64,000 nt of DNA from assembly GCF_021869535.1 (NCBI RefSeq), contig NW_026262734.1, positions 44,640,001-44,704,000 on the forward strand. The letters run 5' to 3'. Below the pieces are notes generated by a model. It ran no database searches, was not told the origin of the DNA, and saw only the letters and a list, made by a program, of their open reading frames with translations. A program made the translations under genes and the position numbers. Of this stretch, positions 2,959 to 62,326 are shown piece by piece. Source of the DNA: Mytilus californianus (Eukaryota). The first letter of the stretch is position 1, and each line of letters begins with the position of its first letter.

Positions 2959-3002
2959 GCACCATATCCGGATTTCGACAATTAATGTCTCTTCAGTGAT
3001 GT
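2959..3002 (-). ncRNA. Minimal type I hammerhead ribozyme (unit 2)
   Basis: Reverse complement ACATCA-CTGAAGA-GACA TTAAT TGTC-GAAA-TCCGGA-TA/TGGTGC. Confidence 0.85.
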
Positions 3003-9823: not shown

Positions 9824-9978
9824 GTATGACAGCGGTTTCTTCTACAAAAGATGGGTTTAAGATGGAGACATCAAATATTTCTCCAGTTGAAAGATCGAGA
9901 ACAGACGGGTTCGACGATATAAGGCAAGCAGAGCCAGTCGCAGAAGAACACAACTACCAAACCAACGACCTTATATCT
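9824..9978 (+). CDS. Exon 1, ATG at 9826: MTAVSSTKDGFKMETSNISPVERSRTDGFDDIRQAEPVAEEHNYQTNDLIS (phase 0 out)
   Basis: Acceptor ttttatag|GT ATG, donor TCT|gtatgt. 51 open codons; phase fits the next exon. Confidence 0.6.
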
Positions 9979-12900
9979 GTATGTTTATTATACTATATTA
10001 TGTCCTTTGACACCTTTTTGATTCATGCGATCTCCCCAGTTTTTGATTATTACACTTTACGAAATAAAATTTGCAAATGGATGATTATTATACAACAGCT
10101 GTATGCATAATGATGATGATGATGATGATTTTTTGTCGGAATAACATTTTTACTCTTTTTCTGATTATTGTACTAATCAAAAAAGGCTGATAAACACAGC
10201 TTGAATACATTAAATTCTAAAATTATGAACATATTAGACAAATTAATTATAAACGTCTATACGGTGGGGGTCTACTCAATGTTGAAGACCGTACGGTCGT
10301 CTATAATTGCGTACAGTCATTCCATTTAAACTCTGGTGGATATTTGTCTCATTGGCAATCATACCACATCTCCTTACTGGTATAACGCACTGTGAAGATA
10401 TAAATGAAGAAAGTGAAATGCAAAAGCTTTGTGTATATATTTAAGATATACACAAATAAATTTAATGATAAGTATCCCGCAGCACCAGCTGAAAGGCAAA
10501 CGTTGTGTTTGCCTGACTTAAATACGGGAATAATAGGTTTTGATGTTGTCCATCTTAATTGAAACCTTTTTTTGTTAACGAACACCATAACTACATTAGA
10601 AGATCAAGTCATTATACTTATGTACCGCTTAAATTAGAGGAATTGAATCAACAATGAATAAACTCAGGATTTAAATTTTTTACGCCAGACGCGATGACCG
10701 AAACAAAAAAATAAAGAATAAACATAGAAATTACATAAAACAATAGACACAAATCACCGATATAAGATAATCGGTAGTTACCGAAGGTAAGTTCAAAGCC
10801 AATTAAAACAAATAAATAAATCAAGTTCTCCAGGACTAAAGTACCAATCAGTACATATCCAACTGATTCAGTGTACAAACATCATTAACAGACTGATAAA
10901 CGCATCAATTGTGCTATGCAAAAAAGAAAAGAAAAAGATAAACCGTATCGACACAACATATGAAATAATGAAGACTCATAACTTTACATATATAGCAATA
11001 TATATTAAGTTGTGTTTTACTTTCAAGAATAAAATCAATATTAGTACCGATAAAAATAATATCTAAAGATTTTCTGCTGCTTTACATGGGTAGCATCAAA
11101 TTTTACGTGCTTTATAACCAACATCACCGAAAAAATAGGATAATCTAGTTTTAATAAAGAAAGTTCAGATATAATTAAGCTGTGGTAACAAATCCATTCC
11201 TTAATACTTTATTAGTTATACATAAATTACGTTCATTTGAAACGAAATCGTCAATACAGACATGATAACAGCGAGCGAATTGTGAAACATACACACCGTC
11301 GGAAGGGACCAAAGGAACATCAACGTCCAAACAGGAACGAAAAATCGTTTGGCTTTCAATTTTGCAAAACACATTGATAAATTAATATTGGAGTAAGAAA
11401 AAGTCTGTTTAACTTGAAGAACAAACACAATTATAGTGATTATGCATTTTATTCTGTTGACTGTTATGATTATTAACCAGGACATCAAGTGTTATCTGTA
11501 TATATATTACAAACACTATATTACAGAATGTGGCCAGGTTAAAGATTGTTGTGAACGCCTTTTACCGTGTGTCTGTCTGGACAATCAACTGAATAAAGTT
11601 AAAATAACGGTTTATGGCGTAAATTTTTCAGATATAACAGTATAATTAGAACATTGTAAATTGGAAACAAGATATACAGTAGAGGAAACGATTTCAAATT
11701 TCCACCACAAACTTTCCTTTTTTTAGAATAAGAGGGTATTTTTGCCACATCCTATGGCGTTTACCTTTTATAATTTGTGCGGTTTGCTAGAATATGTTCT
11801 GATTAACTACTCTAAAAAACTTTAAAAAAAATACGGAACCTCTACAAAACTATAACAAAAATACCGAACCCCAAAGTACATTCAAAAAGTGAAAGTCCAA
11901 AAACACTGACTAAATCCAACGTTAGACTTTATCAAACAACAGAATAAATTGAAAACAACTTTCATCTTCCTGACTTGGTACATGCATTTACCGAAGAAAA
12001 TGGTGGGTTAAACCTAGTCTTTTAATTGAGGGCAACATTGATTTAACACACAACACTTCTTTGTTACAGATACAATAGACTTACAACTTTCTCATTTCAG
12101 ACGAACCAATGTCAATTAAGTTTGTTTTTATTAGGCTCTTTTACAAATTTATAAAATCTGTATCAAAATTAGGTTGGGATATCCGGTGAATTTGAAACTC
12201 GATGGTATCTGTCAATTGATTTATACATGTAGGTCGAACTTTGTTACCCTTGAACCTGTCTGAATTTTGTATATATTTTCATATATTTAACGGTTGGAGA
12301 GACATTACTAGTATATTGATAGATTGACATTTTAGTGAATTTATTTCAAAACCGGTTGAAGAGACATAATAGTTATCATACACCAGACGCTCGTTTCGTC
12401 TTCATAAGACTCATCAGTGACGCTCAGATCAAAATAGTAAGAAAGCCAAACAAGTATAAATTTGAAGAGCATTGAGGACCCAAAATTCCAAACAGTTATG
12501 CCAAATACGGCTAAGGTAATCTATGCCTGGGATAAGAAAATCCTTAGTATTTCGAATAATTCATACTTTTGCAAACAGTAAATTTATAAAAATGACCATA
12601 TAATTGATATTCATGTCAACACCGAAGTGCTGACTACTGGGCTGGTGATACCCTCGGGGACGAAACGTCCACCAGCAGTCGATGGTTTGGCTTTCAAGAG
12701 ATGTGGTGTAATGATTGTTGATTTATATTTATGCCTTTTAATGCAAGTGATTGTTCTGATAATTTGAAAAATATTTATCAAGTAAATATTTCAATAGACG
12801 GAAATTCAAGATGAACCACGAGTCCAGGGTTATCTATCCAATTTTTCAACTTTTGCTGGAGAAAGAATTACTGATCGATATGCTGGAGGTATGTGACTTA

Positions 12901-15900
12901 TTAATTTTTATATACATATTTATAAATAGAAATGTTTTTTCGGATGCTAAAATCATAAATTAAAAAAAATGTTATAAAACCTACACAATTACGCATATTA
13001 TTAATGACAATAGGGCGTACACTTTATATCTAGAAATAAATATTGCAATGAATGGTGGTTTTTCATTGATTTGAAAAAAGTTTATTAGTTTATATTTGAT
13101 AGGAAAAGGAAGTATTAAATTTGTCTGAAAATCGTCTAATGTCATTAAAGAGAGAAAAACGTTTTACCACAAAATTTCGGGCAATACAATATTTCTCTAC
13201 TCTCGACATTTAAATTATAGATATTTAAAACTATCTCGAGTGGAGATACATTGTATCACACTTGATCAGGTGGTTAAATCTATATTGACAATAAATTGAG
13301 GTATGAAAGGATTAGGAATTTAAACTTTCAATGTCATTTGCGGACTGTAAGATACAAACATATTTTTTACCAAATGCTGTCTCATAAGCGCTATAGCTGA
13401 AATGAAACTAATACTTCCTTGATTGTCTTATACAATATAATAGCATTTACAATATAACATATTGAAAACAATTGATTTATTGTAAGTTGCTTATCGTCTA
13501 GTGCATGAAAAATAAAAATAAAACTGGTTGCAACTGAAAATTGCATCTAATTAAACCATTAAAATGATATGTTATGAATTAACACGATAATGTCTGTACC
13601 AATAATGTCTGACTACTGGCGTAGAGTTTACTGCATATATATACTTTTTGGTAAAATACCAACAACATATGCAATTGGCGTACACGCTTGAAAGTATTTA
13701 ATAATTCCTATAATTTTGCTGTATCCCTGCAAGTGTTCAACTGAACTCATGAATTGATTGCAGGATTATGCATGGTGAATCACAAAAGGAAGCCTATATA
13801 TTTACTCTGTTTGTTTATGTCAATACAAGACCAATATTATGTACAGTACAATGCATATCTATTATGTTTGGAATTTTATATTTGTACATTACGTTCTTAT
13901 TCTGTTATTTGTTTGTTTGGTAAATGTATTGATTGATTGTTTGATTGGCTGATTGATTGGTGTAAAGGTTTATAGAAAGACCAATTGCATAGCGTAGAGG
14001 AGAGACGCATATTTCATGTTGAGTTGTTCATTAACTGAGTGTTTGTTTGGTGTGAAGTGACGAAAATTCTGTGTTCCATTCCCCCGCTCCTGATACAAGA
14101 AAATACAGTACGGGGACCACTTCCTCGATTAAATACACGAGAACGGGTCTCCAGGCAAACAAGAAAGAAACTACGAGAGAATTTTCAGATTCATGTAAAA
14201 CAACAACAAAAGCAAAGATCCCATTCTGATTTTAAATCACATGAAAACAAACTGCATACACAACAAATACAAAAAATATAAATTCCAAGAATCATAGAAA
14301 AAAATAAATGCAAAATAAAAGGAAGATTCAAGGATATTTGTTTTGGGATGTTAATCTTTGCATGTTCTCATTGTAATTATGTAGGAACATGTAAGGATAT
14401 TTTTTCGGAACAGGAAAAGTAGAAGGGTATTAAATCCTGTATTTTTACCGGCCAAGACATATAATGACTTTAACACAAATAAACATGCTGTACTGATTCG
14501 GAAACGTCTTTTAAGGAGTACTAGACCCTACAGATGTGTTCCGCTTGTTCCTAGAAACCCGAACCCGTTCATGTTTTAATAGAGGAATTTGTTCCCGGTC
14601 GGCCCCTTTATTTGGAGGACAGTGCATTTGCCATTCCATGGGCAAACAATTCACGCTAAATATTTGTCACTAAACATATAAACTGTTCAAAGATTAATTA
14701 AATATTTCTTGAATATATCCCATATATAAAAACATGAATGTAGATTCAGAATAATTTATCTTCAATTTTATCTTTATGATCAAACCTTTGAAAAGAATAT
14801 ATTATATTAATCTTTAGTTTATTTTGTACCAGTTTAGATTAAGCTAGCTTCCACTAGCAATACAATTTTGAATGTTAAAATTAAAAGTCATAACTTCATG
14901 TTATCCAAATAATGTAGAAACAAACAAAACCAAAATAAAAAACTCTTACATGTTTACACTATTTGCACTTTAGCTTGGAATTTTCGAATAATTTCTCTTA
15001 TATTTTTAGAAAAAATCAAACAACACTCACGAGTTGTTAAAACATCATGGACACCCAAGGAAGATATGCAGTTAGGCACAATAGTCAGGGTAAAGAAATC
15101 AGGAAAAGAAGTCCATGTGCAATGGGACAAGCTAGAGGAAAAAGTTAACCTGCTCGATCTACGCTTAGTTGACAATGCGTCAGGTATTCACCAATTACAT
15201 TTTTTCAACGTTTTATCATGAAGTAAATATATATTAGATGTCACTAGTGTAGTTGGAACTGCTGACCATTTCGAGGCATCCGAGTAAACCACCATGCTCA
15301 ATCTTAGTTTTTTTTTAGTTTTCTGTGTAGTAATTTGCAATTATAATATGTTATTCGACTTTTCGTCGTTTATTTTGCCATCATGTTGTCTTTTATATCG
15401 TTTGATTGCTCCCTTGGTCTTTTTCAACATTAATAAAGTATACAATTTAAATTGTTTTTTAAATTGTAAGGCTGTTTCTCAAAATGATGTATAAAGAATT
15501 TAGATAAAAACAACAATGACTATCTGCCTATGTACAACCGTTTTGTACGGCCATATACATATCATCTGTATTTTAAAATTCTCCTGTTTCACTGTATTCG
15601 TAAATCATTGATATCAAAAGTTGACTACATGATACGATATGGTAAATCAAGGTTGGCGATGTGCTTACGCGATCTATATGATGAATCAAGGATGCCAATT
15701 TGTTTACGTGATATATATGGTGAATCAAGGTTGCCAATTTGTTTACGCGGTTACGATATTTTCCTCAAAAGACCATAATGGTGTACAGTACAATGATAAT
15801 TTATTATTTCTACTCAACAAATACTGTAACCCGCTGAGGAAGAACAAATAATATTGTAGTTAGTCTAATATTTTCAAATTGCTGTGTAATTAACTTATGT

Positions 15901-18900
15901 CGAGATTTTATCTGGTAAGAGCATAATTTAATCATACTATTCAAGTATTATTTCTGATTTAAACAATATCTCCAATGATAATTATTAACGATTCAAAATA
16001 TATTGAATTTCATTTTTCTAAACACAAAGCAAAAAGTTAAGCACTCCAAAGTTTTTTTTGAAATGATACGATTAGTATCAGACGATTACGGACGAAATAA
16101 TCGCAAATATAGAATTGTTGTTTGTAAGGCCATTACAGTGGCTTTAATAAAACACAACAAATATCAACAGAAATGATAATTTAATGAATAGATTATCACT
16201 AAATCACAACCCCAGTTAACATGTTCATTTTAAGTATTGACCTTCTGAGTTCAAAATGACTGAAAAGATTGGCATTGCGCTTGGCAAAAGTGAATTGTAA
16301 GCCAATTAAAGACATCCATGGTTCAAAGTTTAATTTCGAGTGAAATCACCACTTGCTTGGATGACGGTCTCAACCGGCCTGCGTCTTTTACTGGCTTTCT
16401 GTCGTCGGATTTTCTGCTGTGTTAGCTGTCACCATTCCCGGTGCATTTCTACTTTCAACTGACGTACGTTTTGTAGAGGAGGTTAGACTGCCTGTACACG
16501 ACGACATTTCTTGCCCTAAAAATGCGCTATTGGAATCAAATCCGGGCTCATGGCTAACCATGGAAGAGAAGTCATGGCTTCAACTTGGGGTAGGCGGTTA
16601 CGGTCCTTGAACACTGCGGCCTAGCGTTTTCATCCATAAACACATGTCTCGCAGCCAATGGATGGTTGTCAATATGGTGGACAAACACCGGCTGAAAAAC
16701 GTCTCTGATGTATTGATCACCTATTAGATTTCGACGAATGGTCAGATTACAAACATGAGTGATGCACCCCAGTATTTTTTTGTATCCAAACTCTCACGCG
16801 TCCATCCGTTACATGCGACAGAAACCAGTTATCGTCCGACCACTGGATCTTGCGCCAGGTCCTTAAGTTCCAACTATGTGGTGGTCAACGCAATGCCAAT
16901 GCCAAGTAAAACACAATCGTTGACGATGATGAAGGTAAATCCAGAAAAGCGCTCGAACGCATGCAATTTATAACATTACTATTTGCAAATGGCATTTGTC
17001 TTACACGGCGATTCAGTGCCCTGTCTTTAAGCTAATATTTCACAGGTTGTCTACAGGATCTAGGTACTGTAAGCAGGGAAATTTTCGCGGCAGTCTTATT
17101 TTCTCGGTTAGATTGGAAACACAAAAATAAAACTTTCGCGAATATTTTCATGGAGTTGGCTTGGGTGTGTTTTCTCACAAGATGGCTAATTACAGTATAG
17201 TGATAGCCCATCTGATTTCCAATATCTTGAAAGGACATCCCGGTTGGCCGCAAGCTGATAATAAGCCATCTGAGAGTCTCCGGTATTTGTCGTCGTACCA
17301 AGTTAACAGACAATGTATAAATGTGTCAAAACACCGGGCTGAAATACCAAAATTTAAAGCGTGGAAATACTGAATTTTGGATATTAAATGGAGGTATTGT
17401 GCACGTGCATGATACCTCAATATCTTAATAACAGGTCATACCTGTATTATCACTATTTTTTATAGAACAATGTGTGTTTAAATCAATATTTGCATTTAAA
17501 GAGCTTTTATGTTTCACCTGTAGCATTTCAAACTATTGCAACGTTTGAAAAATTGTATTTTACCACTATAACAACCTTCAACAGAGTGTATAAATAAACA
17601 TGTGACCGCTTTTTACATTCTGAAACGCTTTAAGGGTCCCAAGTTTTGGAACATATGAGTCTATTGTTATACAACTGCTACAACTTTGGCTTGACTGTAA
17701 CACATTGTTTTAGCTGGTGTAACGCTTTTGAACAGTATAAGTACGCCAAAGGTATAGTGGGTTGTACTTTATAGTTGTGCTAAACCCTATCTCGTTACAT
17801 TAAATGTAATCAATTGTTACCTCTCTTATACATGTTATAGCTATACTCATTTTGTTTAAAAGTCATTTTCAGTCATCGATAAAATAATTAATTAAATGAA
17901 TGTCTCTATTATGAGGTTTGTTTGGTACAGTCCTGAATTAAATGTAGATGGTTTCGTGGTTGAATCATATTAGACAAAATAAGATGGCATGCTTATCTAT
18001 TTTATCAAATCTTTATACTTCACTAAACATAGATGAATAAAACCAAATTCTATTTTTAGCACATTCTAAATTAGTGATGATTTAATTGGCTTTGCCAAAA
18101 AGTTTTCATTTTCAAATTACATGTCTTCATTATCTTCATTTTAACAAAATAACATGAAGAAAGAAATATTATATTTAACATTTCCGAATTATTGTATTTT
18201 TTATAGAAAAAAAAGAAAAAAGTTCAAGAGTAGTTTTCATATCACGGACAATCATGCGCAGCAGTACAGTAAGCAGTATGCAGGTTGGAAGAAACGTTAA
18301 CCTACGTTTATTAGACAATGCGCCAATAAGTATGCACTTCTTGTATTTTTAGTTTTGATTGTGAACTCTTCGTTGTTGTAAAACGGAGAGCTTAAATGAA
18401 ATAGATGATTTCGGGTATACGAAAAAGGTCAAGGTAAAGTAACGATTCAATATATATGAAGGTCTGCGTTTTACAGGTTATCTAAATTACAAAAAAAAAA
18501 AAAACAACAATGATAATGATATATAACAAATTAAGAAATTGTCAGTTTTAGATCATAGTTAATGATTGGTTTCTGTCTGGGTTAAAACCAGAGGAACCCG
18601 AAAGGTCTTTAAAACAGAAAATCAATTGGAGCGTTGTCATATCCTTGTAAGCGAGGCATGGACGCAGGATCTGTATTTTAATCAGATTGAGTTTGATTCA
18701 AATGTCACTAATGATATAGTATGAAAAACGAAAAGACTACTGATAAGCCTTGTATCTTTGATGATTTGTTTTTAACCAATATAGAGAAATACCAAGCAAT
18801 TCTTCTATGGTTAATAAGTAAGACATAAAAATACGGATACATATGAATAAAATTGGATGTTACAAAATTTCTGAAATTATTTTAGAATAAGGATTATATC

Positions 18901-21900
18901 TCCCTCCTGCAAAGCTCTGATTCCTTGCCTGACTTTGGCTACCCTTTTTGTCCTTTTTTGGTTTTATCAGTTCTTCAAATATGAATAAGTTGTGGATTTC
19001 AAATATTTTGGCTTCTGGTTTACTACCACTGATTCGGGCCCTTTCAGAAAGAACATATAAGAAAGTTGTACATATTTTAAACAAAATAGTTCCTACGCAT
19101 AGCTGTAACTTTGTCAATAAGAAACATATTTAGGCAATTTTGGTATCAAATGAAACCTTAAGGACTTGAAATAACTATAGAACCCTTGTTGAAAATTTCT
19201 TTTGAATAATAATAAAAAAGAAATTATAAAAGGAGGGCACATTTGCCCTGTTGATCGGATCAGAAGTACCTGTTTTGTACTACCAAACTGCAGAGAACCA
19301 ATGCGCTTTAATATGCAATTAAAGGTGTGTTGAAATTTTACGCACAAGTCAGGATAAGGTAATGTTTTGACATGAAATGACTACCACTTTATTTGAACTT
19401 AAGACAAAGTAACCATTAATGCTTGAATTCAAAATTTATCAGAGAAAACATTGGGACTATGAATTAGTTTTATACCTTCTTGAATCACTGAAGAGACAGA
19501 TATTATGTTATATTGATAAGCATGGTGCAGTAAAAGTAATACCGTTAATGTTATCACTATCACTGTGTCGATACCTCTGCTGGTGGACTGGTAGGACTGT
19601 TAGTCTTCTATGGTATACCAAAATCAGTAGCCGATGCTAGATTCGGTTAAAACGTGAAGATACAGATATTGTGTTATTAAAATTTTGATTAATAATTGAA
19701 TCTCACTTGTGTAAAGCTTTAATTGCTTACCCAGATTTGGCTACACCATTTGTCCTTTTTAACAGCTCTTCAATTTTTGAATAGTATTAAGTTGTTTTTA
19801 ATTTTTTATATGTTTTGTCACCGAAGAGACATTAGTAGTCCACATTTAATAAGACATATAAGGCATATAGCTATTTTCGCTGCTTGTTAACTACCAATGA
19901 GAGAATCTATGGCCCAGGGATAAATGCTATACCACTTATACAATTTGGGAAGGTTGCAACAAATAGTTTGTGATTGTTTGATCTCTATAAAATAATATTG
20001 AGAATGGAAACGGGAAATGTATCAAAGAGACAACAACCCGACCAAAGAGCAGAAAACAGCCGAAGGCCACAAATGGGTCTTCAACACAGAGAGAAAATCC
20101 GCACCCCGAGGAGGAGGTCAGCAAGATCACTTTTGTATGCCAAATGTAAATTATAATATAGATTGGTAACTGTAACATCCCTTTCACATGTGTAATATCT
20201 ATCCCCATTTCTTTTGACTGTCATTTTAGTCATCTATATTGTAATAAAATGACTGCCGCTGGTATGAATAGTTGTTTTACGTGCAGTAATGTATCATATG
20301 TAGCTAATGTCTGTAATCTTTCAAATACAATTGGTTAATCAAAAGCAAATCAATCTCATATATCTTATCAACTCTTTGGAAAAAATAACTTAAAAAAAAT
20401 AATATATTTTTGGTATATTTTGTATAGGTCTAAATTTAATTGGTTTTCATTTTAAATTTCGATGTTACATGTCAATACTATAGTTTAACCCAAAAAATTC
20501 CAGGGACGAACGGTTGTATTTTGCTTATGTTTGACATTTTCGGATAATTGTTTTATTCATAGAAAAAATAGAACAAGGTTCAAGAGTAGTAAAAAAATCA
20601 TGGACACCCAAAGAAGAAATGCCTTTAGGAACAATTGTTCTGGTGAAGACATTAAGAAGTGAAGTGTATGTCCAATGGGACCAGATTGAAGAAAAGGTTC
20701 ATCTTCATGATATACGTTTAGAGTCTAGTCAACAATGCGCCAACAGGTATTACCCAATTAGAATGTTTATCGTTTGTGGCTTTTGTATATTTGTTATCAA
20801 ATAGAAAGTGATGAGTTCGGGTTTTGCGAAAATATCAATATAGAGCCATCAATTCAAAATGTATAATGAAGTCTGCGTATTACATTAGGTCGTCTAATTG
20901 ACAACCACTAATAATTAAAATAATATATGAAAAAAAAATAATCAGTACATTATAAGTCTTAGATCCAAGCAAATACTTGCTGACTACATGTGCTACTGTT
21001 CTACTGTAGATCAATACAATTTGGTTGACTAGCAGCAACATATGCCACTACCGTAATCGTACATGTATGAATTATATCATTAAACTGGGCCCACGAGTAG
21101 CTACATGTAGCAGCATCAAACATGGTGAATCAACCAGAATAATTGATATGTGTTTGCTTTAGGTCCAGTGACAAATATATGGTACTCTCTCTCTCTCTCT
21201 CTCTACATGAGGTACCGGGATTTAGCGTCCAAATTCTGACTGAACGGTGGTTCGTATTTATAAATCCCGGACAGCCAAATGGACGCCAACTTCGGAAGGG
21301 TTTAACCACTGGTCGGTAGAAAACCAAGGTGACCGTTTTTTTTTTTACCTCAGTCACCCTTGGAATGATCACCAATGAAAGCCTGTCTATTTACCCAGTT
21401 ACAATGTAAGTTATGTTTCATAAAAAAAAACTAAGTTTGCCGTCAGAGCGTATTATGCAATAAATTGAGTTTGTCTACTGAACGTTTACTGCAATTTCAA
21501 ACTCTGCTCTTTTCTTTGTCTTGTGTCTTCTGTCAATTATATGTTTTAGAAGGAAGTCAAATTATTTAACTGAAAGATAGTATTTCTTTTGAAGAGATCA
21601 CTGATGATTTTATGAGATCGTTGTTCCGAAAATTTTTGTGATCCTTTTTACATTAATATTTTATGACTGTAACAGCCTACATAACGGTGTTAACAAAAAA
21701 TTTGGCAACTGCTTTAATTCTAAAATGCTTTTACTATCCCCACATAAGGAAACAATTTTTTGAACTGGTTCAACTTTGGACAGGCTGTTTCACGGTGTTT
21801 TTACCGTTAAAACTCTTTGTACATGTTATAACACAGAAAGAATACTCAATGGACGATGGGTTGCACTTTTTGTATGCTAAATAAAATTGAGAATGGAAAT

Positions 21901-24900
21901 GGGGAATATGTCAAAGTGACAACAACCCTACCAAAGTGCAAAAAACATTTCAAAACCTTCCAAGTTACGACAAATTAACCATTACAGCACACGAGTTTAC
22001 CAACGGTTTTTGTCGGGTTTCGTGTTACTTAGTCTTTAGTTTTCTATGTTGTGTTTTGTATACTGTTGTTTGTCTTTTGATCAATTTTGGTTTTTGCAAT
22101 GGCGTTGAAGCTCGTTTACAACTTATAAGTTTGATGTTCCCATTAGGTCTTCACCTCTCTTTTACAGCTTATCTTAATTTTTGGTATATTTTGTATTAGT
22201 TTGAATTAAAATTTAATTTGCTACCACTTTGCATAAACTCAAATATAATAACTTTTTTTTTAACTTAAAATGTCAAAAGACAAACGCTTACATTTTTACT
22301 TTCGCTTACATTTTTACTTTCACTTAAGTTTGACATATTACAATTATTTTGTTGATAGAGAAAAAGAAGAAGGTTCAAGAGTAGTTAAAATAGTATGGAC
22401 ACCCAAAGACGAAAGTTGTGTAGGCACGATAGTTAAGGTCAACAAAACAAAACAAACAGCTCGTGTTCGATGGGACAAGCAGCCTGAAGAAAAAATTAAT
22501 CTGTATAAACTACGTTTAGTAGGCAATTATCTTACAGGTATAAACTAATAATATTGTTTTACTTTTACCTGTTTACTCTATATATTTTTAAAAGAAAGAA
22601 AGCATGAGAGCTGATTTCAGTTTTTTGAAAAGTTCAACACACTATTCAAAATGTATATGGAGGTATGTGTTTCACATCAGGACATGCAATTTATTCCAAA
22701 GCTGAAAGTGACCTTGTTTAAGTGTATTCGGCCAAGCGTTACATTGAGTAAGTTAGCTGCTTATTTGATAAGGCATGGTACGTCAAACGCGCATTTCGTC
22801 TACCGTTAAATTCATTAGTGGCGCTTGAATTAAAAAAAGTGTTAAGGTTGTAAAGGGCAGTATGCAGTATGTTTCTTAAAGGAGAGACACAAGATACCAT
22901 AAGGACATTCAAAGTCGATGATAAACTGACAATGGCATGGCTAAAAAGAAAAAGACACACAGACAAACAACAGTACACAGAACACAACATAGAAAACTAA
23001 AGACTGAGCAGCACGAACCATAAGCATACTGCATTTTAACTCTGCTTAACTTTCTCTTGTATATTTTTCGGTCTTTCTTCAATTTGGTGATAGAAGGAAG
23101 TCAAAATCTTTAACTGAAATATTATATTTATTTTGAAGAGATTACTGATGATAATATTGTGGTTACGAAAATCCTGGTAATACGTTTAGGAAGCTATAAT
23201 GATATTGTAATGAATCACATATTTTTCATTCTTGTTTAATGCATTTTGCCTCGATAATCTGCTAAGAATATTAAATGAGCTACCACATAATATGATCAAA
23301 TATTCAAATATTATATCAAATGTGTTCAATATTCAATATTTTCAAAAAATATTATAAACAATTCAAAATATAGTATATTAACATTTTCTTTGAAAGCTTA
23401 AAGTATACATGTATCCTTGCTTGCTGTTCGGTGTGAGCCAAGGCTCCGTGTTGAAGGCCGTACTTTGACTTATAATGGTTTACTTTTACAATTTGTGATT
23501 TCGATGGAGAGTAGTCTCATTGGCACTCATTTCACATCTTCTTATATCTATATAACATTTTGAATTTTAATATGACGCTCCTCAAACGCTTTGAGTACAC
23601 ACGAGTGGTGAAATATGAATATATTGCATGCCAGCTGATCGACAACATCATGATTTCTTTGGACTGTTGAACGAATGTAAAACTGAATTTACCAAAACAC
23701 AGAAACATAAATAAACGATGATAAAAATTCGTTGAATGTCAATGGTCATAGATAAAAGTAAAATAATAATTTAATTTCGTCCAAACTGTCCATGTATGTT
23801 ATTTTAAATCGTTTAAGCATGTCACTAATAAAGGTTTTTCATATTTTACATTGACATTAATAGTGTATTTCATTAAGGGAACAGCAAACATTTGCCTTTA
23901 ACCTAGAAAGCTTCTATCCAGAAGAATTGCCGTATTTGTCCTATTAAAATAGAAATAATTCATGTGGGTTGAATTTATACTGATTTTACCACGGATTTGC
24001 CCTTTATTCCGATATTTTACCCCTCAATATCGCTCGTAGTAAAAAAAATAAGCATAAAGGGCCATCACGTGGTAAAATCAGTTTAAATTAAAACCCCCAT
24101 GAATTATATTTTAAATATCTGAAACACCGAAGCAACTGTTTGTGATATTGAACGATTATCCCAACATTTAATTAGCCGAAACAAAGATATGGCAACTATG
24201 TTAACTCTGAAATGATTTAAAGATTTATTATCTACAATTTTGTGGGGGTGTAAAAAAAAGCGGCATATATGCAGTTATTGTATAGATGTAAATGAAAACA
24301 CATATTTTGCTTGTCATTTTCGTACTTTAATGAGCGCAATAAAAATCAAAAGTGTATTGATTATCGTGTACAGTTAGAACAGAGCCCATACTATATGCAT
24401 ACATGTATACAGCATGTAACGAGCGATGAACTTGACCTTCAAGTAACAACACGCTACATTTATGACACTTCGAATACTTGTTTTTATTTATAGATAAAAT
24501 AGAAATAGGGTCTAGAGTAGTTAAAAAATCACAGACAACTCGAGAAGAAATACCTTTCGGCACAATAGTCAACATAAATCAGTTAAAAAAAGAAGTTCAT
24601 GTTAAATGGGACAAGCCTGAAGAAAAAGTTAACCCGCTTGACCTACACTTATACGACAACGCGCCATCAGGTAGTAAATAGCTATAATGTGTAACTTTTT
24701 TTACTTTTGGACTATATATACTTAGTTTTATAAACCGGGAAGTATTCTGTTTAAATTACTGGAAGAAAAAGCATTGCTTCCGTTGATAAATGTTTCTTTA
24801 CCTTTAAATCTTCTTAAATGTCCCTTGATATATTCTTATCACTTTTTGAGATTTGCAAAACCGTACAAAAAGTTGTAACAGATCCCTGCAACCGACAGCT

Positions 24901-27900: not shown

Positions 27901-30900
27901 GACAAGGTTCTTGACTTATGTAAAGGTATTAAAATAGTTTGTTTTTTATCTTAAATTCCCTCTTTTTGAAATAACAAGACAGTGCAAAAACAATCAGTGT
28001 TGGATTTGTCTTAAAATTTTAATACCGGTTTTATAAATAGAAAAATAAAAAACCACAATTAACATAATCACATTAAACATTCAAAGAAAGCTCGTAATTA
28101 ATTAAACAAAGCTCAACACAGGTATATGTTACCTACCGAATGAAATCATGTCGCACTTATTTTGATGTCGGTGACTGTACTTCGGAGTAGAAGCCTTTCA
28201 ATAATGTCATTATAAGTTAAAAACAAAAACACGAAATGTTGCAAAGATAATGCAAAAAGAATAGAATAAATAGTCTAGTCTTTCAAACTATAAAAAATAT
28301 GTTCATCACAAATTATACCAGACGTACTAATTTAGCAACGTCAAGTTAACTAGAATCTGAATAATAAATTTGAATACGTCTGAAGGAAAACTAAAATGAC
28401 AAATGATAAACTTTTCAAGGACTATACATCCCTTTTGATAACAAACTGAAAAAGTGATCCTCTTTTTTATATATTGGAGTTTAAAAAAAAACAGTGTTAA
28501 TTGTCTACCAATATTTTATCATTTAGCTTCTAACGTTTTCACGTATTAATACGTATTCCTTAATTTTAAATATTAGGATTGAGCATTCCTGATGAAAATA
28601 AATCCCGAAAACCGCCTACGACGCACGGAATTTTCATTTACCACAAACACTGACCAGTTTTAACTTTGTTAATCGAGAGAACAAATTCAATGTGAATTTT
28701 AACAACAGTTTACCCCCAAAAAATGAAAAAAATTTTCCTAACAAACTATATTTGCTTCTTGTTTTTTTTAATGTGCATATACTGATATAATGTCATGGGT
28801 GGATACCCCATATCCTTTCTTTTCTGTTATATCATTCTTGTTCGACAAAATAACAACGAAAAACATACATACAAAGGAAAACCTGTGTAATAACATTATG
28901 TGTATGAAGTTTAACATGTACACCAGCAAATTGCAGCAAACTAGTAGTAATATTTCTATTGAAAGATTATCTTGGTTTATTTGAATCAGATCTGCATATC
29001 GTATAATGAATATATTTCTTTAATATGTTTAAATGTTTGTTCAAGGAGTGAAGCATACTAACGTAACATGTGATGAATGTTATACATATCCTCTGCGTGG
29101 AATACGATGGAAATGTCTTCACTGCGACAGCTATGACCTCTGTTCAGTCTGCTATATGGTTGATGAACACAATGTCAATCACATCTTCAGCCGTATTCAA
29201 AGTGAAGATTCGAAAGGGTAATAATCAGTTTTTATTCATATATTTTTTTTCCTGTACTATTATATGTCATTTTGTTTTAATTTTTAAAAAATACAATGTT
29301 TTATTTTGTTGGCATGAATTTCGTATCGACCAAACGTACTGAAAGTTAATTTCGACTTCTGGACGTGTAGAAACTAAGGTTAAAGTTCGGTAAGTGCGCA
29401 ACTTAGCCCAATATTAAGTCCATTGTTTCAAGTCAAAAAGTGTGTCTAGTTAATAAATTGACATGTAAGTAAAGTCAAATATAACCATTTCTGTCGATCC
29501 TTCTTGATAAAGCGTTGACATTTACATTCTAAATTGAAAATTCGTCTAGATTTCATCCACTTTCAGGCCTAATAAACCTAGAGCGTAGAGTTATAAACTA
29601 AATAGTCAATTAAAGTTAGATATATAATTGTTGATGACAAGCATAATGTCAAAAGATTATTTTTGTCGACTTATGTGCTGTATGAAATATATCTAGCTTA
29701 CTAGCACTATATATTAATTCCATATCCCAAATCATTAAATTTGAAAGCTTTAAAAAGGATTGTATAGTAATAAATTAAATCCTATGTTCGTATTCAACTA
29801 CTACAAATATTTGTAGGATTAAATAAAGAGCGCAAAAATATTGAACCGGTATTAAAAACCATTGATGTTGTTATCACATGATGGTTTGTACAACAGTAAT
29901 GTTAAGCCGCATCAGAGATTGTCCAGTAAATTAACCTATATCGGTATATAATTTTAAATATTTTGTCGGCTTTAATACAGAGTGCCAAAATATCTTCCTT
30001 TATTTCAAAATAGTAAACCGGGATTAACATCAGCAGTCTTGATTTCTCAGGATGGTTTATTTATTAAAAATGCTTGCCTGCATGAATAAGCACTGGCAAT
30101 ATTTGTACTTTATAATTCAAATTGATGCTTTCATTATAAAACAGCAAACGTGTTTACTCAAAATGGATTTTATAATAATAAATGATACCAATATTGTTAT
30201 ACAATTACTACAAACATTTATTGGCTATTATTTACACTGTCAACATTTTAAAATGATGAATAAAATTAAAAAAAAAAAAAAACACATTATAAATTGTATG
30301 CGTCCGAATTGCTTTTTTTAAATCACGATGGAAAGTACATCGAGAGGACTTATTGTGAACAAAGCAACTTGAAAATAATGTAACTATCCTGTCATATCAA
30401 TATAGTTCTTCTGAAGCTTTTAATCCGTCTTCGAAAATAAGGCTTTTTGTTAAAGCGATTCGCTCGGGTATTTTTTCTTTGTTTGAATATTCGAAATGGT
30501 TTTACGCGTTTTTAACGCAATCTTATAATTGTTCTCTCAATTGAAAAGGCCTCTAATACAACATTCGAGGTATCTTATTAATGTATTTTTATGTGACTTA
30601 ATCATTGTTGTTAATTGTTGAGGTCGATTTTGAAAGAATAATTTACTACAATGTACTTGTTCCATTAGACCTTTGTTGCAGGTTTTAATTTTTTTAACTT
30701 TGTTTTTAAATTAAAAGGATATTTTAGGCTAAATGACAATTGATACCAATACATACTTTTTGAAAGCTGGAAACAAATCAAAAATTAAAATAAGCCAGCA
30801 TTCCGTTTAACAGGTTTTTGCATTCTGATATTGTATCATATAAGCTGTTAGTACCAATATAAAAAAAAATCACGAATGAGCGAAACAAAACATCTCAAAA

Positions 30901-33900
30901 ACCTGCATACTGCATGTACTGTGTAACGCAGCTGAAATTGTATGACATCTTTATCAAATATATAAGAACAGTTTGAAACACTTTGAAACATTATATTTAT
31001 AAATACTTGTAACAATCTACGGCCAATATACATAAAGAAAGAAATGCGGTTCTTATAATGCGAAATTTGAATTAACTAGTATATAGGTATAATTATTTAA
31101 ACCAGAAGTTCTTGATTAAATGTATTTTTTTCGGCTAATATATCTTGTTTGACTTGAACGTTTTATTGATAGCAACTGTAAAAGTCTATATATACACTTT
31201 GTATACTTTATCAACTTTCTTATTGGAGTACGACGGGTGAGACAATTGGAACAGGATTTGCTGACACTTCTGGGGAAAGTAAGGTCACCCGAAATTGTTG
31301 TAGGACTTGTGATGCTCAGTATTCAGTTTTTTTGTAGTGTTTTGTGAACATTTCCTAGTATTTTTCTATATTTTCGTTCAACATATGCATGTTAATGAAA
31401 ACATAGACTATTTATATTGCACTTAACATACTTTGTTCCAGTTTTACAAAACTGACGACTAAAAAAAAAATATATTAGATTACTTCATAAAAAAAAATAG
31501 TTATGTTTCTGTGTTACAGAAAAGAAATGCCACCACGGTTTGATGTTAAGTTGACAGGCTATGCATTTGCATGTGGCATACTAGAGAATGCAGAAGTTTC
31601 GCTTCGGAAAGATAACAGAAAAAAAGGTATAAGAATTACAGATTGGATGTCAGGTTTTACATTTGAATTCGAGTTTTTTCCTCTGGGGTAGTTTTCAGGA
31701 GAATGTTTATGATAAACATAACTGCTTGAAATTCTATAAAAACACTTCTCGTTTTTTTGTGACATGTTTTTTGTCCATATGCGATCAAAGTCGATTTAGG
31801 AATACTGAAATTAGAATAATTGCCATATTTTGCAAGTTGACAGGTCATGTTTGTTTTGTTTTATACTGTCTGTCCTGTGCTTTGAACAGAACATGTATAC
31901 ACTGATGATGCTAAAATAAATACATATGACGTAAACGTAAAAATTGAACCAGTTATGTTTGGAAAATTTTAGAATGATGTCATTGCTAACAATGATTCAT
32001 ATATGCTGATTTTATTATTTGAAAATTCATGATGATTCTAGGTTTTAGTATACATTATAAGGCCATTAAATTTTGTAACAAGGATACATGTAGTAGGGAT
32101 TGGCTCGACTACTGAAAGAGGTTATCAATTATTAATCGGTTACTTGAAGTATTTTTGTGCAATCAATTATTATTCGATTACTCGGATTTTGTTTGTAATA
32201 TATTACAATCGATTACTTTATCAAAAATTATAACATAACTTTTCAGTTACTGTGATATACGTGCTACAACATAACCCAACATTATTAAGAAATTTAAACA
32301 CCATTATTTCGACGTTTGTTGGTATTTTTCCAAAGAACACCATTTTGAATCGTGCATAAAAAAATATTACCAAAATACCAAACTCAAATTGAAATTCAAA
32401 AAGGCAACTTCATAAAAACTCACAAAACCAAACGTTATCAACTAACGGAAGGAGTGGAAAACAACTGTAATATACCTTAAAACCGAAGTCGGTGATCATA
32501 TGATTATTTTCTATCATTACAACGGAAATTTCTACATGTTCTGTATCAACAACATACAATTTGTTAAGATTACCTATAGAGCTGAAATTAGAGATTTGAT
32601 GATTTCAAAACAAATTTGAGAACTTTTTTCGCCGATTTTATGTTTTTTTTTTTGTTTTACAAATGTTTAACCATTTGGGGAGAAATTCAATCAGTAATAT
32701 TTCACAAATGAAAAGAGATTAATGCGTTTTTTTTTTCGATTTTAAGTTAAAGTTGAATGCTACATTTTACCAAAAGCTGACATAGCAGATTTACGTGATA
32801 TTCTATTGTGATAATTAGATTTTGACATACCTACGTTGAAATAGAAAGCACCATTAACTTTTTACTGTGATAGTATCTAAATGATGTTTCAATTAAAGGT
32901 GTTGTACTAGCAATACAAGATGATGAAATCGACGTACACTGGTTGTCTAATCATAAAAGAAGTCGACACAATATACTGGAACTACAATGCGAGGACACAA
33001 CATCACGGCAGTTTTATCCGGATCATCTTCCGATACTTGGAAAAGGTTACTATCATTTACTCTTCAAACCATGTTCTTATAATACATGATGACGACTGTA
33101 CTAAAATAAAAAGATAATATTGAACTTACCTAAAACATAGGCAGCATGGAGTTAAACCAGACTATTGATACAAATTGTATGTATAACTCGTATACAGTAA
33201 TCGAAAAGTAGAAAATACCAAATAGATTACATCTCAACATTTGACACTATAAATATGGTTCAATTTGAAACTCCCCTTAAAAAGTAAGTTTCGAAGCTTA
33301 GTCTTAAGTCATAATATATTGGAAGGAAGTACCGCCGTTACAAAGCACATATCTGTATCATTTTTACAATGAATGTTCCGGGTCAAAATTTTGAAAGACC
33401 AATACAGAATATTAAATATCGGTATTTCATATTATATTTATATCTAAAGATTTGTGGAGCAATACTTATAAAACATGTAAAAGTAAATGCTATATGAATA
33501 AGAGGAAATTATATCGTATTGCCAAATCTTTCAGCACAACAAATGGCTTTTTGCAGTGTATATATTTGTTTGCATGCAATGGTACAATTTACAAAACTCA
33601 TTACATTTAAACAAAGATTGACAGTGAAATATATAGATGAACACAATTAAGGGTTGAGTAATGCTGAAACAAAACATTAAGTTCTTGTTCAGTATTATTT
33701 GACCTCATGTCAATGAGGTCAATGTTGTGAATGAAAAGTAACTAAGAGAGAGGTTGAAAAAGAGAGGTATTGATAATTTGTTTCTAACGATATATGCAAA
33801 GGACGAGGTCTTATTTTATCTCGTTGTTTTTTTCCATTAACCTGGATATAGTGTTCACCATTGAATGAGAATTCTGTCAGAAGGTACAAAAAGGGACGGC

Positions 33901-36900
33901 AATAAGAGAGCACAAGAATTTGACGTGAAAAGGGTCTTCAAACAAAGAAATTTTAAAATGACATGTCTTATTAGACGCCAATTTGAGACCGAACGTCGGT
34001 CTGAGTCCAATACATATATATGCAATTGAAACATATTTAACCTTTAGAGAGTATAATACACTCGTCGACGATTGTTAAACGCTTGTACAACATGTGTTCT
34101 AAATGCTTTTTTAATAAAGGTGATTATTTAAATAGATACTCTAGGCCACCTTGACGTTGATTTCAGCCTCAACAATATAAAACAAAAGGTAAATGATATA
34201 TGCACGTACACTGTAAGCTATTTTTTTTAATAGAATAAATATTTTCTACAATTTCATACATATATTAAAGATATAAACAGAAATCCTTCATTTCATCTGT
34301 CTGTTAGTCGTCCGTCTCCGCACTGGATATTAGAAACTATCGAGTCCAAATAATGTTTGCCTTGGTTGTTTTGACACAAAGACTATGGAACGTTATAAAC
34401 ACGTTCAAAGCTAAGTCTTACTGTACCAGTGAATAATCTATGAATTACATATTTGAATGGAATATATATTTAGGTGAGTGACATTTTAGAATAGCCTCTT
34501 AGTTAATGAATTTAATGTACCAACTTAGCATACGACTATATTATATATCATTCGAAAGCCAATTATTTGAACTTTCTGTTTTGCCGGATAGTCGATAAAT
34601 CGTATGGTGCAACTTTCGTTTAATCAAGTTCGAAGGTCAAAAATTAACATATCTAAATTTTGCCAAAAATAAAAATAAATTAAACAAAAAATCTTTTCTG
34701 GATCTTGTATATAGTTTCGTTTTCTAAAAAACGTATGAATTGTACATTGTATATAACAGAATACAATAATTGAAAATCTTTAAATTAATAGTTAATTGCG
34801 CAATAGTTATAGAAAATTGTTATTCATATAAAAATCCCCCAAAAAGTTTGAATTACTGTTGAATCAAATAATTGCTTACTAAAGTAGATCAATATCTTTA
34901 TTCCCAAAATAAACGCGTTTATCGTTAAAGTTTATAGTTCAAGGAAATTTTGTTCATTGATTGAAACTACAATTGTTGTATATTATCGTGGAGTACAATT
35001 CCTTCGTGAGTTATTCGCTTTAATCTTTTAAAATTTTAAGAAAAACTGTATTTGCGAAAGGGCGGAATTTTGGAAAACTGTGTAAGTTGGTCTGATTGGT
35101 TTTTAAATTAGCAGTCAGCTTTACTAGAGCCAATTGATGATGTCAAAATATTCTTCAGCAGATGGTGGAATTTTGGGAACTGATTGGTTTTTAGATTAGC
35201 AATCAGCTTCATTAGTGTCAATTGATGATGTCAAGAACTTTCTAAGCACTGAATAACGGATAGTGATTGATTTGAGCTTATTAAGTTTGACAAATACAAA
35301 TATTTTGGTTTTCAATCATTTTTTTTTTCATTTTCACTGAAATTTCCTAAAAAAGGCGTTTTTTAGTGAAAGAAAAATCATTCATGTTTTATTGCATTTA
35401 ATCTATGTTCTAAACGTTTTTCTTGTTTTCATACATTGTATTATTATTCGATAGACATACTAAGCAAAATTGCTTATATATTAAAAAATAAGATGTAGTT
35501 CGTCCTCGACCTTTGATCTTGATTTTACGGACATTGCACCGTAAGAATATTTTACGACGTCGACCGGATAAAAAAGATGCATGTAATTCAAATGACATGC
35601 TTTCGAATGGTGTATGATTAAGCCATATGCTTGGTGGTTGCATTTTAAATAACTTTTATAATTGATGGCACTCGCCTAATTGAAAAAAGGCCACCAACAG
35701 TAAGCACATCCCAAAAATAGTATATAAGGATATAACATTTTGTATATTAAGAAAAGTGATTGTAAACGTTTAATTAAGATACACATTAAATTATACAGAT
35801 TCAGGTGAACATTCGATATCGGATCGAAAAGAAACAGAAACGCTCATATAAACCTGTGTTGTATCTCATCTTCGCAAACAATCAAGACACAGATCACAAA
35901 AAAGACAGATGTACACTTATGGATGAAATCTTTGAATATTCAAGTAAGTAACTCTAAAGTTTTTATATTATAGTTTTATAATGCATCAAGTTTGTTATGT
36001 CTATAACTCTTTATTTCTGCTTTCTATCATGCAAGACGTATTACAAGAACTCATTTTCTTGTATCTAGGTTATAATAATTATTTCTTAATATGATTCCGA
36101 TTTTTCTTTAACATTAACGAAAGAGAAACGAAAGATATTAAAGTGACATTCAAACTCGTCAGTCAAAAAAAAACTTGCAATTCCATGGCAAAAAACGAAA
36201 AACGACAAAAAGGTCAAACAAAAGTAAACGAAACACAACACAGTGTGCACGAAATTGACTACTTTGGTTCAGGCTTGAAAAATGCTGATATTATTGTTTA
36301 CTATTATCATAGTTTAAAAATCATTTCAAAATAAAGGAATGTATTTTCCTAATGCCTAGCTCAAATTATTTTTCGAGTTTTGGCTTTAATTTGATCCTTT
36401 TTGGTTTTATTAGCCCTCAAATATTTCTATTAGTATAGACTTTGAAATATTTTGGCCTCGATAAAAACAGAAAAGGCATTTAAAATTATTGTCGAATTGC
36501 GCACGTGGTGCAGTTAAATTGGAAACATTTACGTTATTGAAAAAAAATAATTGTAAAGAACTGAACTTATTTCAAGAAAAATAAATGAGCATAAGTACTT
36601 AACGTATTTTCTCATTTCGGCCTATGATATCTTCTAACTAAATCCATTTCTCAGACTTTTGATTTTGTTACCAAAAAACTATCGACGAAAGTTAACTTGT
36701 ATTCTAACTTGAATTGTAGACTTCTCAACTGCATAATACTCAAAAAGTATAACTGTATCATAAATATGAAGTATAAACCTGTTCCTCTGATATCTTTCGC
36801 CTCTCTTTTTCAAGAGGATACTGACAAAAATGTAATACGATTAGCGATAAAATAGATGAAAAAATGTTGTTCCGGATGTCTGTTAAGTACACAGATCGAT

Positions 36901-54157: not shown

Positions 54158-54203
<46 letters not shown>

Positions 54204-62279: not shown

Positions 62280-62326
<47 letters not shown>

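What the first reader, a model, noticed from the sequence alone, without database searches (positions are those of the whole stretch)
15010..24670. Five tandem phase-symmetric copies of the first MIB/HERC2 exon: possible variable-specificity cassette
Seen: homologous exons at 15010, 18207, 20563, 22361 and 24494, about 1.8-3.2 kb apart and bounded by phase-1 introns, so they can be included or skipped singly. Intron sequence is co-duplicated (GATGA.TTCGGG..CGAAAA..ATGAAG.TCTGCGT after copies 2 and 3; 21545-21640 paralogous to 23090-23190), showing whole-unit tandem duplication. The copies differ strongly in protein sequence. Inference: either a poly-MIB/HERC2 array or Dscam-like alternative choice of the binding domain of a channel.
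Basis: partly seen in the sequence, partly recalled or inferred. Interest (0 to 1): 0.75.

Follow-up and report, generated by a model that had tools for sequence, protein, structure and literature searches.

The report
Five-exon MIB-like domain array in mussel TRPM channel
The five look-alike exons are real, but RNA reads and gene models show that they are spliced one after another into a single mussel ion-channel protein, giving a string of small binding-type domains and not a Dscam-like menu from which one exon is chosen.

Summary
Observation confirmed in the main. Five homologous exons lie at 15010, 18207, 20563, 22359 and 24494. Each has AG/GT splice sites, and nhmmer E-values run from 1e-39 to 1e-71.

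- Copy 2 is a 123-nt remnant that lacks the domain core.
- The intron between copies 3 and 4 is phase 2, not phase 1. Copy 3 is 184 nt (+7) and copy 4 is 179 nt, because its acceptor lies 2 nt upstream. Those two exons are therefore frame-locked.

Stranded RNA-seq and three sets of transcript contigs show the joints c2->c3 and c3->c4 at exactly these sites. RefSeq models from three Mytilus species contain all five copies in series.

Four paralogous genes on this chromosome, and M. trossulus, carry the same array. All 20 paralog exons are open, their indels are multiples of three, and dN/dS is 0.23-0.34.

The copies are minimised MIB/HERC2 domains (hhalign 98%; the Pfam model alone is sub-threshold). 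They sit before a ZZ finger, a second MIB-like domain and a TRPM-type channel.

Verdict: a constitutive domain array made by tandem exon duplication. The Dscam-like choice is refuted for copies 2-4. The scan has already noted the MIB-ZZ-MIB/TRPM fusion on this window (s1-335330).

The parts
9826..9978 (+). first coding exon (ATG at 9826; ends in phase 0)
   Evidence: tblastn of P0001; sequence and frames read
12798..12888 (+). coding exon 2; ends in phase 1 and feeds copy 1
   Evidence: tblastn at 93% identity; splice sites read
15010..15183 (+). copy 1: full minimised MIB/HERC2-like domain, 174 nt, phase 1-1
   Evidence: AF2 model with pLDDT 81, a five-strand barrel
18207..18329 (+). copy 2: truncated remnant, 123 nt, 40 codons, phase 1-1; open, transcribed and spliced to copy 3
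   Evidence: alignment; RNA joint 18329->20563 with 8 reads plus 3 contigs; open in all four paralogs
20563..20746 (+). copy 3: full domain, 184 nt (7-nt insertion near its 3' end), phase 1 -> 2
   Evidence: RNA depth and joints; 184 nt in paralogs A-D and in M. trossulus
   Evidence: RNA joint 20746->22359, reported as 20744->22357 'cut +2'; 179 nt in all paralogs, and the only possible acceptor in paralog A and in M. trossulus
24494..24670 (+). copy 5: full domain, 177 nt, phase 1-1
   Evidence: lowest dN/dS, 0.10-0.21; present in the RefSeq models
29046..29217 (+). ZZ zinc-finger exon
   Evidence: Pfam ZZ E 1.3e-10; tblastn at 96.6% identity; boundaries read
31520..31626 (+). first half of the second MIB-like domain
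   Evidence: tblastn; boundaries read
32899..33045 (+). second half of the second MIB-like domain
   Evidence: tblastn; boundaries read
35796..63142 (+). eleven further exon matches of the TRPM-like channel part (P0001 residues 505-992); the gene runs off the right end of the window
   Evidence: tblastn; the channel part of the ortholog matches TRPM3/TRPM2 chains at E about 1e-31
21547..21613 (+). intron remnant paralogous to 23091-23157 (87%), a relic of whole-unit duplication or a shared repeat
   Evidence: the repeat finder family D6

Best explanation
The five exons are constitutive, consecutive coding exons of one gene. Tandem duplication of the exon for the first MIB/HERC2 domain of a Mind-bomb-like MIB-ZZ-MIB module produced four full minimised MIB/HERC2 domains (57-60 residues, SH3-like barrels) and one 40-residue remnant (copy 2). 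These are followed by one ZZ finger, one second MIB-like domain and a TRPM-type cation channel.

The array arose before the gene itself was copied four times on this chromosome, and before the mussel species compared here split. Relatives with a single first domain still exist.

After the duplication, a 7-nt insertion at the end of copy 3 was compensated by a 2-nt upstream shift of the acceptor of copy 4. This turned the intron between them into a phase-2 intron and locked the two exons together.

Shown: the exon homology, the splicing order c2->c3->c4, the open frames, purifying selection, and the domain order.

Inferred: the TRPM N-terminus is cytosolic and the channel is a tetramer, so the array would offer some 16 full peptide-docking domains per channel. 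It would act as a multivalent docking platform for a cytosolic partner or regulator, with copy-specific residues giving each domain its own preference.
For: RNA evidence.
- Stranded raw reads (X15) cover the c2, c3 and c4 bins at depth 7-10, against about 0 in the non-repeat intron bins.
- They give the joints 18329->20563 and 20746->22359, 8 reads each. The same joints stand in contigs of X1, X2 and X5.
- One 1683-nt contig chains a c1-length exon, c2, c3, c4 and 636 nt more.

Frames.
- 184 + 179 = 363 nt. c3 is read in phase 1->2 and c4 in phase 2->1. The junction codon is AGA.

Paralogs.
- Genes A, C and D on the same contig carry the same five copies, including the short c2.
- All 20 exons are open and every length difference is a multiple of 3.
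- Each positional copy forms a clade with 98-100% support.
- dN/dS is 0.23-0.34 over the concatenated exons. Exon identity is 0.78-0.96 and flank identity 0.60-0.93; the exon usually exceeds its own flanks, but in a few pairs involving paralog A (c2, c3) it does not.

Other species.
- M. trossulus XP_063448005.1 (P0001) shows 5 matched stretches.
- Models from M. edulis and M. galloprovincialis hold c1-c5 in series and read the c3/c4 junction as predicted.
- The M. trossulus locus has exons of 177, 123, 184, 179 and 177 nt.

Domain identity.
- hhalign of the copies against canonical MIB/HERC2 exons of this genome gives 98%, E 2.9e-13.
- The c1 model is a five-strand barrel, pLDDT 81.
- The ZZ finger follows the array.
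- The channel part is TRPM-like.

Polarity.
- Paralog E and P0012/P0033 have a single first domain.
Against: - The joints c1->c2, c4->c5 and c5->ZZ were not seen directly in this genome. They lay outside the one 6-kb stretch that could be laid. They rest on one contig, on the RefSeq models of relatives and on frame logic.
- Read depth is low (7-10), so minor isoforms that skip c1, c2 or c5 are not excluded.
- The Pfam MIB_HERC2 model does not reach its cut-off on any copy (best 13.7 bits against 33.5).
- The fold match is generic (Tudor, SH3 and KOW rank with HERC2 and MIB1).
- Nothing was tested about binding partners or channel function.
- c4 has a relaxed dN/dS of 0.46-0.93.
Confidence: 0.87

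Rival explanations
1. The array is mostly constitutive, but c1, c2 or c5 (each a multiple of 3 and phase 1-1), or the pair c3+c4, are cassette exons. Some tissues or individuals would skip them, giving channels with different numbers of MIB-like domains.
For: Skipping c1, c2, c5 or c3+c4 keeps the frame. One individual (X5) carries a hybrid c3/c1 exon in the place of c1, which hints at variation in the array. The old M. edulis model P0003 lacks c1 and c5.
Against: No skipping joint reached the reporting threshold inside the stretch that was laid. The RefSeq isoforms X1 and X2 of M. edulis differ only in the transmembrane part. P0003 has an obviously mis-spliced c2/c3 junction, so it is a weak model.
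Confidence: 0.1
2. Dscam-like mutually exclusive choice: each mRNA takes exactly one of the five exons, which sets the specificity of the channel's binding domain.
For: Tandem homologous exons with diverged sequence. Three of the five are phase 1-1.
Against: c2, c3 and c4 are joined in the same molecules in four runs. c3 and c4 are not multiples of 3 and need each other to keep the frame. The lengths are unequal (123-184 nt). Gene models of three species include all five.
Confidence: 0.01
3. Copies 2 and 3 are decaying pseudo-exons (a truncation and a frameshift), and only copies 1, 4 and 5 matter.
For: c2 lacks the domain core and c3 carries a 7-nt insertion. c2 dN/dS is near 1 in two close pairs, but these rest on very few changes.
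Against: Both are transcribed and spliced. Both are open in four paralogs and in M. trossulus. c3 is 184 nt everywhere. The c2 length differences are 9 nt. c3 dN/dS is 0.16-0.42 and c2 against paralog A is 0.24-0.38.
Confidence: 0.02

Closest known systems
Mind bomb (MIB1/MIB2) N-terminal MZM module (MIB/HERC2 - ZZ - MIB/HERC2)
   Same: Same domain order, with a ZZ finger between MIB-type barrels. The motifs RVV, GT[IV]V, V.WD and DLRL are shared with canonical MIB/HERC2 exons of this genome. In MIB1 this module docks the cytoplasmic tails of Notch ligands (from my own knowledge of the MIB1 literature, not tested here).
   Different: The first domain is present five times (four full copies and one remnant). 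The domains are minimised: the DW.W..QDGG.G loop and the YR.G..G hairpin are shortened. There are no ankyrin repeats or RING fingers; a TRPM-type channel follows instead. The Pfam model does not reach its cut-off on any copy.
TRPM cation channels, including the mussel/oyster-specific TRPM expansions
   Same: The transmembrane part of the ortholog matches TRPM3, TRPM2, TRPM7 and TRPM8 chains at E 1e-24 to 1e-31. It lies in a local cluster of paralogs, as described for Mytilus TRPM 'hotspots' (bioRxiv 10.1101/2024.05.23.594666).
   Different: It has an N-terminal MIB-ZZ-MIB extension with a five-fold first domain. No paper in the held library describes this.
Domain-repeat arrays made by tandem duplication of phase 1-1 exons
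   Same: One exon equals one domain plus its linker. The ancestral boundaries are phase 1-1, intron remnants are co-duplicated, and the copies are spliced in series.
   Different: One internal intron changed phase through a compensated 7-nt + 2-nt change. One copy is an in-frame remnant that has been kept.
Dscam1-type clusters of mutually exclusive exons
   Same: Tandem homologous exons that code for a binding-type domain.
   Different: The exons here have unequal lengths, two are not multiples of 3, and they are included together. See the membership test.
Oyster relatives (Saccostrea cucullata XP_062594126.1 and XP_062595554.1)
   Same: MIB-ZZ-MIB modules fused to the same TRPM-like channel body.
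   Different: There the whole MIB-ZZ-MIB module is doubled, not the first domain alone, and its first domain still passes the Pfam cut-off (67 bits).

Membership tests
MIB/HERC2 domain (Pfam PF06701) | Match to the Pfam model above its gathering score (33.5 bits) | tested here: not met
   The best single copy (c4) scores 13.7 bits, E 0.061. 4 of 17 copies match at E about 0.06. The genome-wide six-frame scan with PF06701 lists no hit in this window.
MIB/HERC2 domain (Pfam PF06701) | Profile-level homology to canonical MIB/HERC2 domains | tested here: met
   hhalign of A2 (17 copies) against A4 (9 canonical exons of this genome plus 1 oyster domain): probability 98%, E 2.9e-13, 58 columns. Intermediate oyster and mussel sequences bridge the two sets. 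A4 contains one bridging sequence, which may help the score.
MIB/HERC2 domain (Pfam PF06701) | SH3-like five-strand beta-barrel fold | tested here: inconclusive
   The AF2 model of c1 has pLDDT 81 and five strands. Foldseek gives no hit at E <= 1e-3. HERC2 (9l93, 9l8y) scores Z 6.8-7.1 and MIB1 (4xi6) Z 6.7, tied with Tudor, KOW and SH3 domains. The fold class fits but does not discriminate.
Mind-bomb MZM module | ZZ zinc finger flanked by MIB/HERC2 domains on both sides | tested here: met
   ZZ at 29046-29217 (Pfam E 1.3e-10). Copy 5 lies directly before it, and a MIB-like domain follows in exons 31520-31626 and 32899-33045. The second domain was not itself tested by profile comparison.
Dscam-type mutually exclusive exon cluster | Exactly one exon of the cluster in each mRNA | tested here: not met
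   The joints c2->c3 and c3->c4 are seen in raw RNA reads and in three contig sets. One contig holds four copies.
Dscam-type mutually exclusive exon cluster | Interchangeable exons: equal or near-equal length and the same phase at both ends | tested here: not met
   Lengths are 174, 123, 184, 179 and 177 nt. c3 is phase 1->2 and c4 is phase 2->1.
Dscam-type mutually exclusive exon cluster | Docking-site and selector RNA pairings that enforce the choice | not tested
   Not searched for. The question is moot once co-inclusion is shown.
TRPM channel family | Six-helix channel domain homologous to TRPM | tested here: met
   P0001 residues 930-1304 against TRPM3/2/7/5/8/4 chains: E 1e-22 to 1e-31. 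Pfam Ion_trans E 4.9e-10. The window holds the exons up to P0001 residue 992.
TRPM channel family | N-terminal TRPM homology regions, TRP box, channel activity | not tested
   Not examined here. Channel activity cannot be tested with these tools.

The most novel reading that the evidence does not exclude
The array may vary between individuals or tissues. Gene conversion or unequal crossover between copies (a hybrid c3/c1 exon stands in one animal's transcripts), and cassette use of the phase 1-1 copies, would give mussels individually different sets of docking domains on a TRPM-type channel.
Probability: 0.12. Interest if true: 0.55.

Novelty: new variant of a known kind. Interest (0 to 1): 0.3.

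Why it matters
The Dscam-like idea is removed. The region is fixed as a transcribed, selected array of four and a half minimised MIB/HERC2 domains on the cytosolic N-terminus of a bivalve-only TRPM-type channel.

Two points have some wider value.
- It is a clean example of a compensated frameshift across an intron (7 nt in one exon, 2 nt at the next acceptor). This converts two independently skippable exons into an obligate pair, and it dates constitutive co-splicing to before a four-fold gene duplication.
- Mussels and oysters have multiplied the Mind-bomb-type docking module of these channels in different ways: five-fold for the first domain, two-fold for the whole module. This points to selection for valency in whatever the module binds, and gives a concrete handle (pull-downs with the array) on the function of an uncharacterised, expanded channel clade.

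The protein is already present as an 'uncharacterized protein' in RefSeq, so this is an elaboration and not a discovery.

Tried and rejected
- Pfam scans of the single exon translations gave only marginal hits: MIB_HERC2, UBE2O SH3-B, Xrn1 SH3-like.
- A profile of the copies against PDB sequences gave nothing meaningful.
- Foldseek and VIA second-look searches with the c1 model returned generic small barrels only.
- AF2 of the whole array with a 3-row alignment failed (pLDDT 28.6). Nothing can therefore be said about whether copy 2 is a linker.
- I looked for further copies in the window with nhmmer. There are none beyond the five.
- Two literature searches for a described MIB/ZZ-TRPM fusion found none.
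- Pfam on intron ORFs (a transposon relic between c1 and c2) gave only a weak HTH hit.
- The vertebrate RPTP hits in the big search are short partial matches and were set aside as spurious.
- The spliced protein of this window's gene was never joined. All searches used single exons by reference or public proteins returned by the tools.
Full report
**1. What is in the sequence**

The window is G000:C154:44640001-44704000 of a 1.65-Gb, AT-rich (about 31% G+C) genome. Its closest public proteins are from Mytilus mussels.

An nhmmer model built from them finds exactly five matches in the 64 kb (E 5.9e-39 to 3.5e-71), and the repeat finder groups them. Each is preceded by a pyrimidine tract with AG and followed by GT.

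| Copy | Coordinates | Length (nt) | Phase |
|---|---|---|---|
| c1 | 15010-15183 | 174 | 1-1 |
| c2 | 18207-18329 | 123 | 1-1 |
| c3 | 20563-20746 | 184 | 1->2 |
| c4 | 22359-22537 | 179 | 2->1 |
| c5 | 24494-24670 | 177 | 1-1 |

- c2 has lost about 51 nt of the domain core. It encodes only 40 residues, keeping the SRVV start and the NLRLLDNAP end.
- c3 carries a 7-nt insertion near its 3' end, so it is not a multiple of three.

Short co-duplicated intron remnants exist (families D6, D8 and D10). This is consistent with duplication of whole exon-intron units.

**2. The frame-lock between copies 3 and 4**

c3 starts in phase 1 and, at 184 nt, ends in phase 2. From the first AG the exon is 179 nt, and 184 + 179 = 363. 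The first base of c4 then completes the split codon (AG+A = Arg), and the MIB-like frame of c4 is kept.

The c3 tail 'SSQQCAN' is the ancestral linker (V-D/N-N-A-P-T in the other copies) read one frame over. So neither c3 nor c4 can be skipped alone.

**3. RNA evidence**

One stretch of 6 kb (18150-24149: c2, c3, c4) could be laid.

- In the stranded raw-read run X15, the three exon bins have depth 7.0, 8.8 and 10.2 on the strand expected for a + strand gene. The non-repeat intron bins have about 0.
- Two GT..AG joints are reported: 18329->20563 (c2->c3) and 20744->22357 'cut +2', which is 20746->22359 (c3->c4 at the upstream AG). Each has 8 reads from 6-7 start places.
- Both joints also stand in Logan contigs of X1, X2 and X5, which belong to a second study.
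- No other exon-to-exon joint passed the threshold.
- Contig record 16 of X5 (1683 nt) chains a 174-nt exon, c2, c3 and c4, followed by 636 nt more.
- The fixed differences in X15 within c2 and c3, and one of two in c4, are synonymous; the other c4 change (22418) is Cys>Tyr.

Limits: depth is low, and the joints c1->c2, c4->c5 and c5->ZZ lay outside the stretch.

**4. Paralogs and selection**

A profile of the copies finds the same array in three more genes on the same contig:
- A at 44.57 Mb;
- C at 44.77 Mb;
- D at 45.46-45.48 Mb, on the minus strand.

A single, more distant copy (E) lies at 44.92 Mb.

All four genes have five copies, with the second one short. Lengths are:
- c1: 171-177 nt;
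- c2: 114 or 123 nt;
- c3: 184 nt in all four;
- c4: 179 nt in all four;
- c5: 177 nt in all four.

Every length difference is a multiple of three, and all 20 exons are open. In paralog A the old c4 acceptor is gone (TAG|TG), so only the 179-nt form is possible.

In a maximum-likelihood tree each positional copy forms its own clade with 98-100% support. The array, the remnant c2 and the c3/c4 lock therefore predate the gene duplications.

Nei-Gojobori dN/dS between paralogs:

| Exon | dN/dS |
|---|---|
| c1-c5 concatenated | 0.23-0.34 |
| c1 | 0.16-0.39 |
| c2 against paralog A | 0.24-0.38 (near 1 in two close pairs with 5-8 changes) |
| c3 | 0.16-0.42 |
| c4 | 0.46-0.93 |
| c5 | 0.10-0.21 |

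Exon identity is 0.78-0.96 and flanking-intron identity 0.60-0.93. The exon is usually the more conserved, but in a few pairs with paralog A (c2, c3) it matches or falls below a flank.

**5. Relatives in public data**

The profile search of 1.84 billion representatives gave 23 hits. The best is P0001, XP_063448005.1 of Mytilus trossulus (1412 aa), with five matched stretches. Its 90% cluster holds RefSeq models from M. edulis and M. galloprovincialis.

- All of these models read exon1-exon2-c1-c2-c3-c4-c5-ZZ in series. They read the c3/c4 junction as predicted ('...CANSEKKEGSRVV').
- The two M. edulis isoforms differ only by 44 residues in the transmembrane part.
- The M. trossulus locus (L021) has exons of 177, 123, 184, 179 and 177 nt.
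- Single-domain relatives exist: paralog E, M. coruscus P0012 and M. edulis P0033.
- Oyster relatives carry two whole MIB-ZZ-MIB modules (P0022, P0031).
- Every named hit with a full-length domain match is from Mytilus or Saccostrea. The vertebrate RPTP hits and an unnamed ENA cluster are short partial matches.

**6. What the domain and the gene are**

Pfam's MIB_HERC2 model is sub-threshold on every copy. It sits with other small-barrel families among the marginal hits. The genome-wide scan with that model misses this locus.

A profile of 17 copies aligned to canonical MIB/HERC2 exons of the same genome gives hhalign probability 98%, E 2.9e-13. The joint alignment shows a graded series from canonical domains to these minimised ones, which have shortened the DW.W..DGG.G loop and the YR.G hairpin.

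The AF2 model of c1 (pLDDT 81) is a five-strand barrel. Its structural neighbours are generic: Tudor, KOW and SH3 domains, with HERC2 at Z about 7 and MIB1 at Z 6.7.

tblastn of P0001 lays out the gene in the window (boundaries read):
- ATG at 9826;
- exon 2 at 12798-12888;
- the five copies;
- the ZZ exon at 29046-29217;
- a split second MIB-like domain at 31520-31626 and 32899-33045;
- eleven further exon matches up to 63142.

The gene then leaves the window. The channel part of the ortholog matches TRPM3 and TRPM2 chains at E about 1e-31.

All searches were exon by exon, or used proteins returned by the tools.

**7. Mechanism**

Shown: a constitutive string of four full domains and one remnant domain precedes ZZ, a MIB-like domain and a TRPM-type channel.

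Inferred from what is known of TRPM topology and of the MIB1 module (my own knowledge, not tested here): the array is cytosolic. In a tetramer it would offer about 16 full docking barrels. It most likely tethers or regulates the channel through short peptide motifs of partner proteins.

Five alignment columns are fixed within each copy class but differ between classes, and 20 more are nearly so. This allows for copy-specific preferences.

**8. Known context and novelty**

- TRPM expansion in local clusters is described for Mytilus (bioRxiv 10.1101/2024.05.23.594666).
- An expanded Mib-herc2 orthogroup is described for bivalves (PMC8382680).
- I found no paper on the fusion or on the array.
- The scan's note s1-335330 covers the fusion on this same window. 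My exon map and the TRPM match agree with it.

**9. Verdict**

The exciting reading is wrong and the plain one is right. Interest is modest. The compensated phase change, the conserved remnant exon and a possible hybrid allele are the only unusual points.

Noticed in passing
window 20561-20721 and 15169-15183, as seen in run X5, contig record 16: In one animal's transcript contig, the exon before c2 is 174 nt long. Its first 159 nt are identical to c3 and its last 15 nt to the end of c1. X1 and X2 of the same study do not show this. It could be a gene-conversion or unequal-crossover allele, or an assembly chimera.
   Followed up: partly
window 19950-20149, 21750-22149, 22950-23149, 23350-23549: Intron segments with RNA or contig depth up to about 10,000 and many variant letters: dispersed repeat families. 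19990-20058 and 21879-21947 are 87% alike.
   Followed up: no
window 16365-17435, minus strand: A G+C-richer block (0.38) in the long intron between c1 and c2. Its open frames give only a weak helix-turn-helix hit (HTH_38, E 0.0012). It is probably a transposon relic that accounts for the wider spacing of c1 and c2.
   Followed up: partly
G000:C99 around 35.36-35.53, 38.96-39.54, 44.38-44.46 and 51.10-51.28 Mb: Dozens of weak, partial MIB_HERC2 matches in tight clusters on another contig. They may be a further large family of genes with divergent MIB-like exons.
   Followed up: no
window 2071-3420: A tandem repeat of about 538 nt, flagged by the scan as a hammerhead retrozyme (s1-335392). It lies upstream of this gene's first coding exon. 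I only saw its repeated open frames in the ORF list.
   Followed up: no
P0030 against P0026 (M. edulis isoforms), residues 1021-1064: The only annotated isoform difference in the ortholog is a 44-residue segment in the transmembrane region of the channel.
   Followed up: no
P0033 (M. edulis CAG2188976.1): This public model, named TRPM2, starts with the C-terminal part of a neighbouring channel and runs on into the next gene's MIB-ZZ-MIB start. It looks like two tandem genes merged by the predictor.
   Followed up: no
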